A stretch of 63,899 nt of DNA, counting the filler, from Octopus bimaculoides (taxonomy: Eukaryota): NCBI RefSeq assembly GCF_001194135.2. It is 7 parts of 7 records of this genome, joined end to end, with 100 filler letters (N's around TTAATTAATTAA, not from the genome) between each part and the next. Parts side by side here need not be neighbours in the genome. Positions count along the whole stretch, not along the records: positions 19,636 to 41,779 come from NC_069008.1; 6 more parts are not named here. One strand, written 5' to 3'. Under the pieces are notes generated by a model. That model searched no databases. It was not told where the DNA came from and saw only the letters and a program-made list of their open reading frames with translations. The translations under genes and the position numbers were made by a program. Shown here piece after piece: positions 19,636 to 35,228 of this stretch (within the stretch, counting starts at the first letter, position 1; every line of letters begins with the position of its first letter).

Positions 19636-19797
19636 TTCTTCTTCTTCTTCTCATCTTGTTGTTGTTGTTCTTCTTCTTCTGCTTCTTCTTCTTCCTCCTC
19701 CTCCTCCTCCTCTTCTTCTTCTTCTTCTTCTTCTTCTTCTTCTTCTTCTTCTTCTTCTTCTTCTTCTTCTTCTTCTTCTTCTTCTTCTTCTTCTTCC
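19636..19797. repeat. (TTC)n/(CTC)n trinucleotide array
   Basis: Long TTC run giving spurious poly-Glu/poly-Phe ORFs. Confidence 0.95.
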
Positions 19798-20409: not shown

Positions 20410-21090
20410 GTCAGAGGTGCGAGAGCATCGGAAAAACCTAGTTTCAATGTGGCTAGACTACAAGAAAGCCTTTGACTCTGTTTCCCACTCTGCTAGAAGC
20501 CCTTCAACTTGCTAAAGTTCCCATGAGAAGAGTCAAAGCCATAGCTGACCTGACTTCATCGTGGACCACCATCATGAAATTAAACACAAAGTGTGAATGT
20601 ATTATCACCGACAGAATGAAATCCGGCGGAAGGATAATCCCAAGGACAAAGAAATAAGAACCCACAATATGGCAGAAGCCATAGCCACTCATAATAAAAA
20701 GGAATATTGGTGGAATGTCTCAGTGATGACCCCCTCCCCCAAAATGTAAACAAAACAGACCTAATATAATGATTTGGGATAGAGAAGAGAAACTGTGCAC
20801 AGTTGTGGAAATCAGCTGCCCAGTGGATGTTAACATAAAACTGAAGATCAGTGAAAAAGAGAACACCTATGCTGAACTATTGAGAAATCTGCAGTTATCC
20901 TATCCAGATTACAAGTTCAGATTTATACCTGTAATTATTTGGGAACTGGGATATGTAACACACTGCTTAAATACCCATCTTGAGAAATTAGGCTTCTCAA
21001 AACCAGAACGGAGAAAGCTAATTCGAAAGACAACAGATCCAATCCATCACTGGAACTGTAAAACTTTCCAGAAGTTTATCATTTAAATAG
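20410..21090 (+). mobile_element. R4/Dong-like (RLE) non-LTR retrotransposon, internally deleted
   Basis: RT motif MWLDYKKAFDSVSH joined within ~200 bp to the endonuclease region KEYWWNV...NRP(D)IMIWDREEKLCTVVEISCP.D...EKENTY. Confidence 0.85.
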
Positions 21091-23159: not shown

Positions 23160-23330
23160 AAGGCGGCGTCAGCACACCGGGAAAAATGCTTAGCGGCATT
23201 TTGTCCGTCTAAACGTTCGGAGTTCAAATGCCGACGGGGTCGATTTTCATCCTTTCGGGATCGGTAAAATAAGTACCAGTTGAGCAATGGAGTCGATCTA
23301 ACCGACTTAACCCCTTCCCCAAAACATGGC
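23160..23330 (+). mobile_element. SINE family C
   Basis: AAGGCGG head, GAGTTCAAAT B-box-like motif and TTTCATCCTTTCGGG..TAAAATAAGTACCAG core. Confidence 0.85.
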
Positions 23331-24533: not shown

Positions 24534-25260
24534 ATGGAAGATTATTAGCTGGCATATTACAGTTGAAAAAGCAAACGCAACAGCAGCAACAAGAGTTGCA
24601 ACAGCAACAACTACAACACAATCACTTGCTGTAACTGGTGTTGAAGTCGGGAATCACTGCAAGTTCGTTTTCGCCAGACGACGTAGCGAATGCAATAACT
24701 GAATTTAGTTATAACCCAGAAGAGGGCAAAACTTTTTCGGCGTACTTCAGAAGATACGAAGAAATCTTTAATGAAGAATGCAAGTGTTGGACAGACGATG
24801 AAAAAATAAGACTACTGTTACGGAAAATAAGTCCTTCAGTACATGAAAAATACTGCAATTTTATCTTGCCTAAAAAAAAAAAAAGTGAAATTTGTTTCGA
24901 GGAAGTAATTGAATTGCTATCCAAAATGTTCAGCGATGAGAGTACCCTGTTTAACACTCGCTTGGAATGTCTGAACCTTTTAAAAGAAGAGGACGAAGAT
25001 TTTGTTAGTTATGCTGGAATCGTAAATAAAATGTGCGAAAAATTTAAACTGAAGGAATTATCTCCAGACATGTTTAAATGCCTTATCTTTGTGCAAGGTC
25101 TGACTGCAAACAAAGGTGCAGAAATACGTGCACGGATTCTTACAAAACTAGAATAGGAGGACCAGAATTTAACCCTCCAAGCAGTTGCAGAGGATGTCAA
25201 AGAATTATCAACTTGCAACAGGACGTAAAGAAAATTGAAGAAAAAAAAATTTCTCTGAGG
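24534..25260 (+). mobile_element. Decayed gag of a Mag/K02A2.6-like Gypsy LTR retrotransposon
   Basis: FSPDDVANAITEFSYNPEEGKTFSAYFRRYEEIF...KIRLLLRK...HEKYCNFILP...FKCLIFVQGL; frameshift after the ATG and premature stops. Confidence 0.85.
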
Positions 25261-26126: not shown

Positions 26127-27173
26127 ACTAGCAGTATAGCCCGGCGCTGCTCGGGATTAAGCTAGGATTATTAAGTGATCAAGTGCTTTATTTCAAACCA
26201 AAATAAGTAACATGGACATCAGATTTGAGCGAAATCCGTTGAAATTGGTTTGGCTGAAAATGGTTTGCTGGCAATTTGATTGGGAAATCCCATAAGGAAT
26301 CAGTTCATTGGTTATTTCCACTCATTGACTGTTTTTTTTTAAAGTTGCATTAGAGATCTGCATAGGAGAAGGTTGATCTGAAGGTTTGCATTGGGGATCT
26401 GGATTGGAGTAACTTAGGAAAACTTACCAACAGCCTTAACCAAAAAATAAGGGGCCTGTCCCTTCTAGGTTAACTCTAACCCTAAACCCTAACCCTGACC
26501 CTAAAACCGTAACCCTAACNNNNNNNNNNNNNNNNNNNNNNNNNNNNNNNNNNNNNNNNNNNNNNNNNNNNNNNNNNNNNNNNNNNNNNNNNNNNNNNNN
26601 NNNNNNNNNNNNNNNNNNNNNNNNNNNNNNNNNNNNNNNNNNNNNNNNNNNNNNNNNNNNNNNNNNNNNNNNNNNNNNNNNNNNNNNNNNNNNNNNNNNN
26701 NNNNNNNNNNNNNNNNNNNNNNNNNNNNNNNNNNNNNNNNNNNNNNNNNNNNNNNNNNNNNNNNNNNNNNNNNNNNNNNNNNNNNNNNNNNNNNNNNNNN
26801 NNNNNNNNNNNNNNNNNNNNNNNNNNNNNNNNNNNNNNNNNNNNNNNNNNNNNNNNNNNNNNNNNNNNNNNNNNNNNNNNNNNNNNNNNNNNNNNNNNNN
26901 NNNNNNNNNNNNNNNNNNNNNNNNNNNNNNNNNNNNNNNNNNNNNNNNNNNNNNNNNNNNNNNNNNNNNNNNNNNNNNNNNNNNNNNNNNNNNNAGTTTA
27001 TCGATTTTTACAGGTATACGCGGGTACCTCTGAGAGAGAAAGTTCACTAAAATGCACATAGGGTCATTCCGAATCTTCTCCTAAAATTGGAGCGACATGC
27101 GTGCTAATTTGTGGACGTGCATAAACCACATTCACGTACACACACACACAAACATCCTCTCTTTTATAGATAT
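26127..27173 (+). mobile_element. Non-autonomous Helitron/HINE-like element containing a gap
   Basis: 5' ACTAGCAGTATAGCCCGGCGCTGCTCGGG (CTAG plus CCCG/CGGG hairpin); 3' (CA)n then CATCCTCTCTTTTATAGATAT. This resembles Lep1/DINE-like architecture. Confidence 0.55.
26468..26519 (+). repeat. Degenerate telomere-like (TAACCC)n run
   Basis: TAACTCTAACCCTAAACCCTAACCCTGACCCTAAAACCGTAACCCTAAC running into a gap. Confidence 0.75.
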
Positions 27174-32003: not shown

Positions 32004-32266
32004 AACAGTGACCTTGTGTACATATATACCATGAAGTACATAATCCGTAAGTCTTAGTATAGCATTTATTACATCTAGTAATAATCCAGTAACAGAATTT
32101 ATTACATCTACGGTAATTTTTATAATGTAGTATGGTAGCTAGATCCTGTCTGTAGTTCATTGTTCTAACGTCCTGTACCCTGATATGCATCTATATACAC
32201 ATGTAGATGTAAGTATGTACATATATGTGTGTATACATGCATATATATTCTTTGTGTCATTTATTT

Positions 32267-32327
<61 letters not shown>

Positions 32328-32400
32328 ATATGGAATAAATGGCATACTAAGACTTACGGATTATGTACTCCATGGTACATATGTACACAAGGTTACTGTT
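32004..32400. repeat. ~70-bp inverted repeat pair enclosing ~255 bp
   Basis: 32004-32074 (AACAGTGACCTTGTGTACATATATACCATGAAGTACATAATCCGTAAGTCTTAGTAT...) is the near-exact reverse complement of 32330-32400. Confidence 0.9.
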
Positions 32401-32748
32401 AAGCATTTTGCCCAGCGTGCTAACGATTCTGCCAGCTCACCACCTTGAAGTGAAATTGAATAATTGCAAAATTATGTAAGCTAATACCTAAAAATGCATG
32501 TCAGAAACATTCATATGACGTGTGTTCAAAATATAATATTTTATGATACCAAATGATAAGTAAACAGTTAGTTATGCGCAAATATATATAATATTTATAA
32601 CTTTTATATCTACTGAAATACATCTTGAACTATGAATATACTTTCACATTCCGAATTATATTTTCTGACGAAACCAATCTTTGGATGAAACCAAAGATCT
32701 TACTTTAACACTGCCATTGCAAACTTAAACAGATTTTACATTTCTTTT

Positions 32749-33336
32749 TCAACAGTGGAGCCGCCAATTCTTCAAACACTCCAAGTCCTCTATCTCTTTA
32801 TTCAGTTCGGTGTCATCCATTATCTTCAGGTCTTCCAGTTCTTTCAGTTCAGGTATCTCGAGTTCTTTTAGCTCAGGTATCTCGAGTTCTTTCAGCTCAG
32901 GTATCTCGAGTTCTTCCAGTTCTTTCAGCTCAGGTATCTCCAGATCATCCAGATCTTTCAACTCATTTACCTCCAGATCTCCGAGCTCGCTTAGCTCCGG
33001 TATTTCGAGATCTAGTTCCTTCATCTCCTCTAAATCTTCAAGTTCCTTCAGCTCAGGTATCTCCATTTCTTCCAGTTCTTCCAGATCATTCAATTCAGAT
33101 ATCGTCAAATCTTCAGGTTCTTTCAGCTCATTTATCTCCAGCGTTTCCAGTTCCTTTAGCTCAGGTATGTCCAACTCTTCTATCTCGCTCATACTTACCT
33201 TTAGATCTCGATTCATCTGTTTTTCCAATTCCTTCAGTTCTTTCAACTCCTGTGATATCTGCTTTTCCTCTCTTTTTAATTCGTCTATCACCTGCACCAT
33301 AGTTTCTTCCTTCTGTGATTCATCTTCATTACTCAT
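32749..33336 (-). CDS. Intact 195-aa highly acidic repeat protein (LEIPELKE units), function unknown
   Basis: ATG at 33336 (MSNEDESQ...) to TGA at 32749 with no interruption; 73/195 residues are D/E; seven IPEL motifs; the differences among the three 24-bp units at 32837-32908 are synonymous. Confidence 0.65.
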   Translation of the reverse strand: MSNEDESQKEETMVQVIDELKREEKQISQELKELKELEKQMNRDLKVSMSEIEELDIPELKELETLEINELKEPEDLTISELNDLEELEEMEIPELKELEDLEEMKELDLEIPELSELGDLEVNELKDLDDLEIPELKELEELEIPELKELEIPELKELEIPELKELEDLKIMDDTELNKEIEDLECLKNWRLHC

Positions 33337-33406
33337 ATTCACCACCTCTGCGAAAAGTTCGTTCAAAGTGAATTGCTTGGGTAGCTTATAAAGGGATATT
33401 TCTTAC

Positions 33407-33527
33407 CAGGAAAATGTTGAATAGGTGCTTCATCTGTGAAATTGGAATGAAGTCTGACAGAATTTGGTTAAAGAAAGTGTTGCCTGGGAAATGAAGCAGG
33501 TCACACGTTCTCTCTGAACTGATGTAC
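33407..33527 (-). CDS. Candidate exon (121 nt; YISSERTCDLLHFPGNTFFNQILSDFIPISQMKHLFNIFL), coding or 5' UTR
   Basis: Acceptor TTGTTGTCAACAG|G and strong donor CTG|GTAAGA; a single open frame. Confidence 0.4.
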
Positions 33528-33668
33528 CTGTTGACAACAATGAAGACATCAATTTATTCGGTTAAAAACCCTAAAATACAAAAATCAATGGAATCAAATA
33601 AATAAATGATGAAAAGCAAAGAAAAAAAAAAGAAAAGAAAAAAGTGGAATTCTGGTTTAAGCACCTCA

Positions 33669-34800: not shown

Positions 34801-35228
34801 GAAAGGGTGCGTGTGAACGTACGAGCTAGAGGGATTTTTGCCGTTAGGTTTTGGCCAGAGGTTCGCTGGGTAAATCGCCTTTCGAATGTAATCCAGCTGC
34901 AAAGTCGACGCTGCTCCTCATACTATATTTCTGGAAGAAATCACGCTGAGCATTTTTGTCCGGCATGCCCACGATTCTGCCAGCTCGCCGCTTTTACTTG
35001 TTTAATTAAAGTGAAAAGAAATAGATTGATTAAAAACAAAAAGCAAAAGCAAAAGCCCAGACAGATAATTAAACAATTAATTAAACACGTAAACTTACAA
35101 ACGAAAGGAAAGAGAAAGAAAGAATTGATTGATAATGTTATCAGTAAATTAAATAGAAATAATTCTAATTTGTTGTTTGATCAATAAGAAATCAATCAAC
35201 CAAATATATAAATGCAGAGAAAGAAAGG

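What the first reader, a model, noticed from the sequence alone, without database searches (positions are those of the whole stretch)
32749..33410. Intact orphan acidic-repeat ORF in a sea of decayed repeats
Seen: the longest low-ambiguity uninterrupted ORF in the window; 195 aa, ~37% D/E, a coiled-coil-like N-terminus, and 8/11-residue LE(E)LEIPELKE units. The only two differences among the three youngest 24-bp units are synonymous (a small sample). It begins 70 nt after a strong donor (33406). A TTTTCGCAG acceptor at 33348 would make the 121-nt upstream exon a 5' UTR exon via a 59-nt intron, and a TATAAG lies ~50 nt upstream of the ATG. Inference: a lineage-specific intronless or nested gene, or cargo of an unrecognised mobile or viral element. 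Polyanionic repeats suggest DNA mimicry, chaperone or ion-binding roles.
Basis: partly seen in the sequence, partly recalled or inferred. Interest (0 to 1): 0.72.

Follow-up and report, generated by a model that had tools for sequence, protein, structure and literature searches.

The report
Truncated repeat-expanded octopus family gene
The acidic-repeat ORF is real, but it is neither an orphan nor mobile or viral cargo: it is the surviving two-thirds of a diverged duplicate of a small gene family found only in Octopus, with that family's own 8-11-residue motif amplified in frame, so it is a fairly ordinary lineage-specific gene or late-stage pseudogene.

Summary
There is a 195-codon ORF on the minus strand (ATG 33336, stop 32749-32751), 37% D/E, with an N-terminal heptad helix and a 24/33-nt in-frame repeat array.

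The window is Octopus bimaculoides chromosome CM046628.1 at about 7.79 Mb. A gene call with exactly this 195-aa product is already on record there.

The ORF is not an orphan. It is a diverged paralog (about 67% nt, 42% aa identity) of LOC106872922 (7.45 Mb) and XP_052833563.1 (7.29 Mb), both on the same chromosome and in the same orientation. Two O. vulgaris relatives also exist. An exhaustive protein search found nothing outside Octopus, and there was no Pfam, PDB or viral fold match.

DNA homology to the family runs 213 nt upstream of the ATG, to the family's own start codon. That stretch is broken by two out-of-frame indels and two stops.

The retained ORF shows coding-type constraint in its own lineage: unique substitutions by codon position are 12/5/21 (p=0.006), repeat-unit pN/pS is 0.31, and the 3 youngest differences are all synonymous. 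However, three of six frames are open here, so an open frame alone is weak evidence.

Verdict: most likely a truncated, still-coding (or recently dead) family member. Interest is low to moderate.

The parts
32749..33336 (-). ORF195: 195 codons plus stop. A gene call with exactly this product is on record in O. bimaculoides GCA_001194135.2, chromosome CM046628.1.
   Evidence: the window is 100% identical to L003.
33175..33330 (-). N-terminal heptad (coiled-coil-type) helix, residues 3-54. It is homologous to the central helix of P0001, P0002 and P0004.
   Evidence: AF2 helix 3-54 with pLDDT above 90. Ten of 14 a/d positions are hydrophobic. Window-lineage substitutions are biased to codon position 3.
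32830..33174 (-). In-frame minisatellite, residues 55-169. It holds about 10 units of 8 or 11 codons (L-E-I-P-E-L-K-E[-L-E-x]), derived from the family's single I-E-M-P-E-L-K-E-L-E motif. It stands where the paralogs carry the L-E-R-L-x-x-L-E-W-H-x-K-Q-K segment.
   Evidence: TRF periods 24 and 33. Units are listed. AF2 pLDDT is below 50 over residues 108-165. pN/pS among units is 0.31.
32752..32829 (-). C-terminal conserved tail, residues 170-195 (…E-L-N-K-E-I-E-D-L-E-C-L-K-N-W-R-L-H-C). The stop is at the same homologous position as in P0001 and P0002.
   Evidence: A 73% nt match to L002 10515-10588 is.
33337..33549 (-). Broken relic of the family's N-terminal coding region, homologous to P0002 codons 1-79, and starting at the family's homologous ATG. 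It carries 2 out-of-frame indels whose lengths sum to a multiple of 3, and 2 stops in the ORF frame. As a leader it would carry two upstream ORFs of 39 and 15 codons.
   Evidence: tblastn places P0001 residues 21-47 in one frame and 59-181 in another. Window-unique changes by codon position are uniform at 8/12/7.
33571..33645 (-). Polypyrimidine tract ending in AG, about 20 nt upstream of the relic ATG. It is a putative 3' splice site of the coding exon. The paralog loci are T-rich at the same place.
   Evidence: Read directly. This is an inference only, and no transcript data are available.
32810..33391 (+). Antisense 193-aa Ser/Phe-rich ORF. It is a by-product of the GAR-rich sense strand and not a separate gene.
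   Evidence: No Pfam hit.

Best explanation
The ORF is the surviving 3' two-thirds of an old duplicate of a small, Octopus-restricted, single-coding-exon gene family. The family includes O. bimaculoides LOC106872922 and XP_052833563.1, and O. vulgaris CAI9742523.1 and CAI9743666.1. All three O. bimaculoides copies lie in the same orientation within about 0.5 Mb of chromosome CM046628.1.

In this copy three things have changed:
- The family's basic, largely disordered N-terminal region is still recognisable in the DNA upstream of the ATG, but it is frame-broken.
- Translation can only start at an internal Met.
- The family's central conserved segment has been replaced by an in-frame 24/33-nt minisatellite that grew out of the family's own IEMPELKELE motif.

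What remains has evolved under protein-level constraint in this lineage. That includes the heptad helix, the repeats and the C-terminal helix with the stop in the ancestral place. It is therefore most likely still (or was until recently) translated into a 23-kDa, pI 4 protein.

Inferred mechanism, not shown here: the N-terminal heptad helix and the C-terminal helix pair with themselves or with the intact paralogs, while the polyacidic, proline-punctuated repeat tail is disordered. Lacking the basic N-terminal region, the protein would act as a modified or competing partner of its family rather than through a new fold.
For: Identity and annotation:
- The window is 100% identical to CM046628.1 7.78-7.80 Mb, and a 195-aa gene call is on record there.

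Family:
- The relatives are P0001, P0002, P0003 and P0004.
- The O. bimaculoides copies lie at 7.29, 7.45 and 7.79 Mb, all reversed.
- An exhaustive phmmer search over 1.84 billion representatives finds nothing else.
- The parent family is real. The O. vulgaris/O. bimaculoides ortholog pair has dN/dS 0.27 and dS 0.245.

Upstream relic:
- Homology continues upstream to the family ATG, but in shifted frames.

Constraint on the ORF:
- Window versus L002 differences by codon position are 0.44/0.16/0.47 in the ORF part, against 0.35/0.33/0.32 upstream.
- Window-lineage-unique substitutions are 12/5/21 by codon position (chi-square p=0.006), against 8/12/7 upstream. The Fisher test for position 2 gives p=0.009.
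- The amino-acid rate is comparable to that of the intact paralogs, with 55 and 59 differences against 52 in 102 columns.
- All indels inside the ORF are multiples of 3, whereas both upstream indels are not.
- Repeat units give pN/pS 0.31, and the 3 youngest differences are all synonymous.

Structure:
- Residues 3-54 form a helix with pLDDT above 90, and the repeats have pLDDT below 50.
Against: - The family's N-terminal third is destroyed, and its conserved LERLxxLEWHxKQK segment is absent.
- Any transcript that enters from the family's usual exon start would carry two upstream ORFs before the ATG.
- No annotated ortholog of this copy was found in any other species. The duplication appears to predate the O. 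vulgaris/O. bimaculoides split, so one would be expected.
- Three of six frames are open across the locus, so the open frame itself is cheap.
- The two-versus-zero contrast in frame-breaking indels is only about p=0.07 by length.
- The constraint signal integrates over the whole lineage, so it cannot exclude recent death.
- No expression evidence could be obtained. No assembled public run carries this product apart from the genome.
Confidence: 0.55

Rival explanations
1. It is a pseudogene. On this reading, a duplicate of the family gene died when its N-terminal region was frame-shifted. The remaining 195-codon open frame persists because GAR/CTN-rich, repeat-homogenised sequence rarely generates stops, and because the repeat units happen to be multiples of 3 nt. 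The gene call would then be an ab initio artefact.
For: - The N-terminal region is broken, with 2 out-of-frame indels and 2 stops.
- The family's central conserved motif is lost.
- Three of six frames are open for 183-217 codons.
- No annotated ortholog exists elsewhere.
- There is no transcript-derived contig on record.
- Two upstream ORFs precede the ATG.
- The near-identical young units look like ordinary minisatellite turnover.
Against: - Window-lineage substitutions in the non-repeat parts follow a coding pattern of 12/5/21 (p=0.006), unlike the upstream relic.
- Variation among repeat units is mostly synonymous.
- The stop codon is kept at the ancestral position, and all ORF indels are in frame.
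- The evolutionary rate is not elevated relative to the intact paralogs.
- These patterns are compatible with a recent death but not with an old one.
Confidence: 0.35
2. It is a spliced gene. On this reading, the 121-nt block 33527-33407 is a 5' UTR exon joined to the ORF by a 59-nt intron (33406-33348).
For: - GTAAGA and TTTTCGCAG are present, and the intron length is 59 nt.
- The join places the relic's middle segment, in the family's homologous frame, in frame with the ORF.
Against: - Both sites lie in relic coding DNA. The same GTAAGA occurs in O. vulgaris P0001, where it is read through as R-K-K codons.
- The join adds no start codon and is preceded by a stop, so the product is unchanged.
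- The 'acceptor' that would open the 121-nt exon lies inside the family's first codons.
- The paralogs are single coding exons.
Confidence: 0.1
3. It is cargo of an unrecognised mobile or viral element, or a true orphan or de novo gene.
For: The neighbourhood is rich in transposon debris, SINE-like copies and microsatellites.
Against: - It has clear paralogs with intact ORFs and an ortholog pair under purifying selection.
- The copies share only the CDS and a short 5' flank, with no common terminal repeats.
- There are only five family members in the whole protein universe searched.
- There is no Pfam transposon or viral domain and no BFVD or PDB fold match.
Confidence: 0.02

Closest known systems
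O. bimaculoides LOC106872922 (XP_014775586.1, 197 aa) and its O. vulgaris ortholog CAI9742523.1
   Same: - They share the central heptad helix, the IEMPELKELE motif and the C-terminal ELxKEIExLExxKxW-x-x-H tail, with the stop at the same place.
- The CDS is a single exon.
- The gene lies on the same chromosome and in the same orientation, 348 kb away.
- Relic DNA of the same N-terminal region and start codon is present upstream.
   Different: - Identity is only about 42% aa and 67% nt.
- The N-terminal roughly 79 codons are broken.
- The LERLxxLEWHxKQK segment is replaced by about 10 amplified LEIPELKE units.
- The pI is 4.05, against 7.8 for P0002.
O. bimaculoides XP_052833563.1 (253 aa, auto-named 'golgin subfamily A member 6-like protein 7')
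   Same: It belongs to the same family and lies on the same chromosome at 7.29 Mb. It also shows an internal duplication of a family segment, so length variation through internal repeats is a family habit.
   Different: It duplicates a different segment, the DLDW-x-VKQK block. Its N-terminal region is intact in the DNA; the ORF is open 54 codons upstream of the annotated start. The 'golgin' name is automatic, and no golgin domain was detected.
Coding minisatellites in charged, low-complexity eukaryotic proteins (general class; from general knowledge)
   Same: - The unit length is a multiple of 3.
- The youngest units are nearly identical and adjacent.
- The protein repeat is kept while synonymous sites drift.
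   Different: Here the array can be traced to a single-copy motif in intact paralogs, and it coincides with the loss of the gene's N-terminal third.
Leucine-rich repeat (LRR) domains
   Same: There is a periodic Leu spacing. The weak Pfam hits are LRR_EndoS (23.7 bits) and LRR_Zer-1 (13.9 bits).
   Different: Both hits fall below the curated cut-offs of 27.9 and 27 bits. The units are 8 or 11 residues rather than 20-30. AF2 predicts helix or disorder and not a solenoid.

Membership tests
Octopus-restricted LOC106872922 / XP_052833563.1 family (unnamed) | Central heptad helix (…KKEMM..L.QVLKRQEK.LEQEL.DLEKQLNQDLK…) | tested here: met
   It aligns to ORF195 residues about 4-47. BLASTP E is 2e-10 to 2e-11 and tblastn E is 5e-21.
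Octopus-restricted LOC106872922 / XP_052833563.1 family (unnamed) | L-D-D-[IL]-E-[ML]-P-E-L-K-E-L-E motif | tested here: met
   The motif is present and amplified to about 10 units.
Octopus-restricted LOC106872922 / XP_052833563.1 family (unnamed) | C-terminal tail E-L-x-K-E-I-E-x-L-E-x-x-K-x-W-x-x-H-x, followed by the stop | tested here: met
   ORF195 residues 177-195 align to P0001 and P0002, with the stop at the same position.
Octopus-restricted LOC106872922 / XP_052833563.1 family (unnamed) | Basic N-terminal region (M-x-P-L-S-P…F-[IL]-S-R-x-K-R…N-S-V-G-P-x-P-N-x-T-D-E…R-F-P…L-F-I-N-E) in frame with the rest | tested here: not met
   The DNA homolog is present at 33337-33549 but is broken by 2 out-of-frame indels and 2 stops. 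It is intact in P0002, P0003 and the L004 locus.
Octopus-restricted LOC106872922 / XP_052833563.1 family (unnamed) | L-E-R-L-x-x-L-[ED]-W-H-x-K-Q-K segment | tested here: not met
   It is absent from ORF195, and the repeat array stands in its place.
Octopus-restricted LOC106872922 / XP_052833563.1 family (unnamed) | Single coding exon, clustered on O. bimaculoides chromosome CM046628.1 in one orientation | tested here: met
Leucine-rich repeat proteins (Pfam LRR clan) | Score above the Pfam gathering threshold, with 20-30-residue LxxLxLxxN units | tested here: not met
   The scores are 23.7 bits against 27.9 and 13.9 bits against 27. The units are 8 or 11 residues and have no Asn ladder.
Golgin A6-like (the name NCBI gives to paralog P0004) | A detectable golgin/GOLGA domain | tested here: not met
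   No Pfam family at E<=0.1 for P0002 or P0004, other than spurious coiled-coil-type hits. Nothing significant was found in the PDB.
Transposon or virus-borne gene | Terminal repeats or shared flanks around the copies, many dispersed copies, and neighbouring element genes | tested here: not met
   There is no bracket of direct or inverted repeats. Paralog homology ends at the CDS plus at most about 400 nt of 5' flank. Only five proteins are found in all databases. There is no BFVD hit. Genome-wide copy number in octopus DNA was not testable with these tools.
Expressed protein-coding gene | Transcript and peptide evidence | not testable with these tools
   Only a gene call of unknown evidential basis is on record. 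No transcript-derived contigs were found.

The most novel reading that the evidence does not exclude
This would be a truncated paralog that has taken on a new function. After losing the family's basic N-terminal region, the copy acquired an internal start. It expanded a polyacidic LEIPELKE array under purifying selection. It now works as a competing or decoy coiled-coil partner of its intact paralogs, or in a new role. That would make it a datable example of gene remodelling by frameshift plus coding-minisatellite growth in an octopus-specific family.
Probability: 0.3. Interest if true: 0.4.

Novelty: new member of a known kind. Interest (0 to 1): 0.25.

Why it matters
It matters mainly as a correction. 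An ORF that looked like an orphan or viral or mobile cargo is a member of a tiny, uncharacterised, Octopus-only gene family. The apparent promoter and splice signals in front of it are fossils of that family's coding sequence.

If the copy is still expressed, it gives a compact natural experiment. The same helix and tail occur with and without the basic N-terminal region, and with a variable polyacidic array. That could help to work out what this family does.

It also illustrates that in GAR-rich repeats an open frame is poor evidence. Lineage-specific substitution patterns are needed instead.

Tried and rejected
- **Pfam on ORF195 and all family members:** only sub-threshold LRR and other spurious hits.
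- **Profile search of PDB sequences:** nothing below E 0.28.
- **Foldseek:** the P0002 model against PDB and the ORF195 model against BFVD gave zero matches.
- **Word-indexed protein search with the full ORF:** With the non-repeat N-terminal 71 aa it returned nothing.
- **Synteny to the P0001/P0002 loci:** rejected. The flank matches are interspersed repeats, and the loci are 348 kb apart on the same chromosome.
- **NG86 dS between paralogs:** the value was 2.2. I judged it inflated by two-fold-degenerate codons and did not rely on it. I used codon-position counts instead.
- **PP1-binding motif lead:** P0001 and P0002 carry R-K-[VI]-N-F. I recognised this from memory as fitting the RVxF-type PP1-binding pattern. 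It is not conserved in P0003 or P0004, and the window's counterpart lies in the broken relic, so I dropped the lead.
- **Bacterial promoter/terminator scan and AATAAA search:** uninformative for a eukaryotic locus.
- **Literature:** no paper mentions the family's accessions or LOC106872922. A general search on octopus-specific genes gave nothing on this family.
- **Orthologous locus in other octopus genomes:** it could not be reached, because no eukaryotic genome collection is searchable by similarity here.

Full report
**1. What is there**

On the minus strand an ORF runs from ATG 33336 to the stop at 32751-32749. It is 195 codons, or 205 from an upstream TTG. It is the longest ORF in the piece 19636-41779 that does not run through assembly gaps.

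The product has 37.4% D+E, 20% L, net charge -51 and pI 4.05. Tandem Repeats Finder reports 24-nt and 33-nt periods over 32821-33088. At the protein level there are ten L-E-I-P-E-L-K-E-type units between residues 55 and 169.

AlphaFold2, run on the single sequence, predicts one long helix for residues 3-54, with pLDDT above 90 for residues 11-50. It gives low confidence (below 50) for the repeats at residues 108-165, and a C-terminal helix at 175-194. Ten of 14 a/d heptad positions in residues 10-58 are hydrophobic.

This covers the GT at 33406, the 59-nt GTAAGA…TTTTCGCAG stretch, the 121-nt block upstream and the TATAAG about 50 nt before the ATG.

The three youngest units differ at two sites, both synonymous. 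A fourth identical-protein unit adds a third synonymous difference.

**2. Where it comes from**

An exact look-up places the 195-aa product on Octopus bimaculoides GCA_001194135.2, chromosome CM046628.1, as a called single-exon gene. The window is 100% identical to that locus, gaps included. No other gene is called within 10 kb on either side.

**3. It is not an orphan**

- The full ORF hits O. vulgaris CAI9742523.1 (P0001, 181 aa).
- P0001 leads to O. bimaculoides LOC106872922 (P0002, 197 aa, 86% identical to P0001).
- An exhaustive phmmer run of P0002 against 1.84 billion representatives adds only two more proteins. These are O. vulgaris CAI9743666.1 (P0003, 180 aa) and O. bimaculoides XP_052833563.1 (P0004, 253 aa), the latter auto-named 'golgin A6-like 7'.
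- P0004, P0002 and ORF195 lie at 7.29, 7.45 and 7.79 Mb of the same chromosome, all in the same orientation, each as a single coding exon.
- L001 (O. vulgaris) and L002 (O. bimaculoides) are collinear orthologs at 88.6% nt, with dN/dS 0.27 and dS 0.245. The family is therefore real and constrained.
- The window copy is only about 67% nt and 42% aa identical to them. Third-position change unique to the window lineage is 21/75, at least as large as the species divergence. The duplication is therefore old.
- No Pfam, PDB-sequence, PDB-fold or viral-fold relative exists for the family.

**4. What lies in front of the ATG**

tblastn of P0001 on the window aligns residues 59-181 in the ORF frame and residues 21-47 in a different frame just upstream.

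The three-way DNA alignment shows that homology runs 213 nt upstream of the ORF's ATG, to an ATG homologous to the family start codon (33549). That ATG is in the ORF's own frame. In between, the window has two indels that are not multiples of three but together sum to one. The ORF frame meets two stops there. Stretch 33337-33549 is therefore a broken relic of the family's N-terminal region.

That region is intact in P0002 and P0003. It is also intact in the DNA of the P0004 locus, where the frame is open 54 codons above the annotated start.

The 'TATAAG' aligns with F-I-N codons. The start of the '121-nt exon' falls in the family's first codons.

Joining the proposed exons as they stand puts the relic's middle segment in frame with the ORF. 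It supplies no start codon, and a stop precedes it, so the product is unchanged.

A polypyrimidine tract ending in AG (33645-33571) lies just above the relic ATG, as in the paralog loci. A transcript entering there would carry upstream ORFs of 39 and 15 codons, both with weak start contexts.

**5. Coding or decaying?**

An open frame alone says little. Three of six frames are open for 183-217 codons across the locus, and the antisense strand has its own 193-aa ORF. Substitution patterns are more telling.

- *Codon positions, window versus L002 (DNA alignment).* The differing fractions are 0.44/0.16/0.47 in the ORF's non-repeat N-terminal part, against 0.35/0.33/0.32 in the relic.
- *Window-unique changes, polarised with P0004.* In 75 alignable ORF codons they fall 12/5/21 by position (chi-square p=0.006). 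This resembles P0002 (8/2/13). In the relic they are 8/12/7. The Fisher test for position 2 gives p=0.009.
- *Amino-acid distances.* ORF195 to P0002 and to P0004 are 55 and 59 differences in 102 columns, about the same as P0002 to P0004 at 52.
- *Indels.* Those inside the ORF are all multiples of three, and the two in the relic are not. By length this contrast reaches only about p=0.07.
- *Repeat units.* Minimum changes per codon position are 7/3/11 and pooled pN/pS is 0.31. The three differences among the four youngest units are all synonymous, with P about 0.011. These units are the most recent events at the locus.
- *Stop codon.* It sits at the family's position.

Caveats:
- The N-terminal region is weakly constrained even in the intact paralogs (7/6/11 and 9/13/12), so the relic's age is uncertain.
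- The repeat units are not independent.
- These signals integrate over the whole lineage and cannot exclude a recent death.
- No ortholog of this copy is annotated in any other species.
- No transcript-derived contig carries the product.

**6. Not mobile or viral**

No direct or inverted repeats bracket the ORF. The nearby repeats are SINE-like copies, a (TA)n-centred palindrome and microsatellites. Paralog loci share only the CDS and at most about 400 nt of 5' flank. Family size is five proteins in everything searched.

**7. Interpretation**

Most likely (0.55), this is a truncated, repeat-expanded family member whose retained ORF is, or very recently was, protein-coding. It would give an acidic protein with the family's coiled-coil helix and C-terminal helix, but without the basic N-terminal region and without the LERLxxLEWHxKQK segment.

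How it works is inference. It would pair through the heptad helix with itself or its paralogs, and carry a disordered polyanionic tail.

The main rival (0.35) is a pseudogene whose frame survives through composition and repeat homogenisation. Mobile or viral cargo and a true orphan are essentially excluded (0.02).

**8. Novelty and score**

The gene call already exists. What is new is placing it in a small, uncharacterised, Octopus-only family and showing that the upstream 'signals' are relic coding DNA. I class it as a new member of a known kind. Interest is 0.25. The deciding evidence is orthologous loci and transcript or peptide data, listed under next steps.

Noticed in passing
window 26471-26519: A (TAACCC)n telomere-type repeat of about 8 copies directly abuts an assembly gap (N run 26520-26994). 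It is either an interstitial telomeric tract or a scaffolding join.
   Followed up: no
window 24638-25156 (+): A 172-aa ORF has a strong DUF7083 match (E 6.6e-22). It is probably a retrotransposon gag-like remnant.
   Followed up: partly
window 41466-41779 (+): An ORF fragment has a DDE_1 transposase match of pogo/Tigger type (E 1.1e-5). It is cut off by the edge of the piece.
   Followed up: partly
window 32004-32074 / 32330-32400: An inverted repeat with 71-nt arms, 92% complementary, flanks a (TA)31 microsatellite about 350 nt downstream of the ORF's stop. It may be a MITE-like element or a pair of head-to-head SINE fragments.
   Followed up: no
window 32397-32446, 34945-34994, 36239-36288, 23167-23316, 36120-36290: These are SINE-like interspersed repeat copies. 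They match dozens of places in the O. vulgaris and O. bimaculoides paralog loci at 75-93% identity.
   Followed up: partly
L004 9839-10000: The annotated start of XP_052833563.1 (P0004) looks too short. The frame is open 54 codons further upstream and encodes the family's N-terminal region, beginning at an in-frame Met.
   Followed up: yes
L001 15704-15760: In O. vulgaris the homolog of the first codons of LOC106872922 carries one in-frame stop. The public model bypasses it with a roughly 5.7-kb intron that contributes only two residues from an upstream exon. The family's extreme N-terminus seems labile.
   Followed up: partly
window 32810-33391 (+): A 193-aa Ser/Phe-rich ORF lies antisense to the finding. 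It has no family match and is a compositional mirror of the GAR-rich sense strand.
   Followed up: yes
window 19636-19796: A (TTC)54 microsatellite lies at the very edge of the piece.
   Followed up: no
window 20769-21086 (+) and 37944-38285 (+): Two ORFs of 105 and 113 aa have no Pfam match. The second contains a C-x2-C…H-x4-H pattern. Both may be transposon remnants, but this was not tested further.
   Followed up: no
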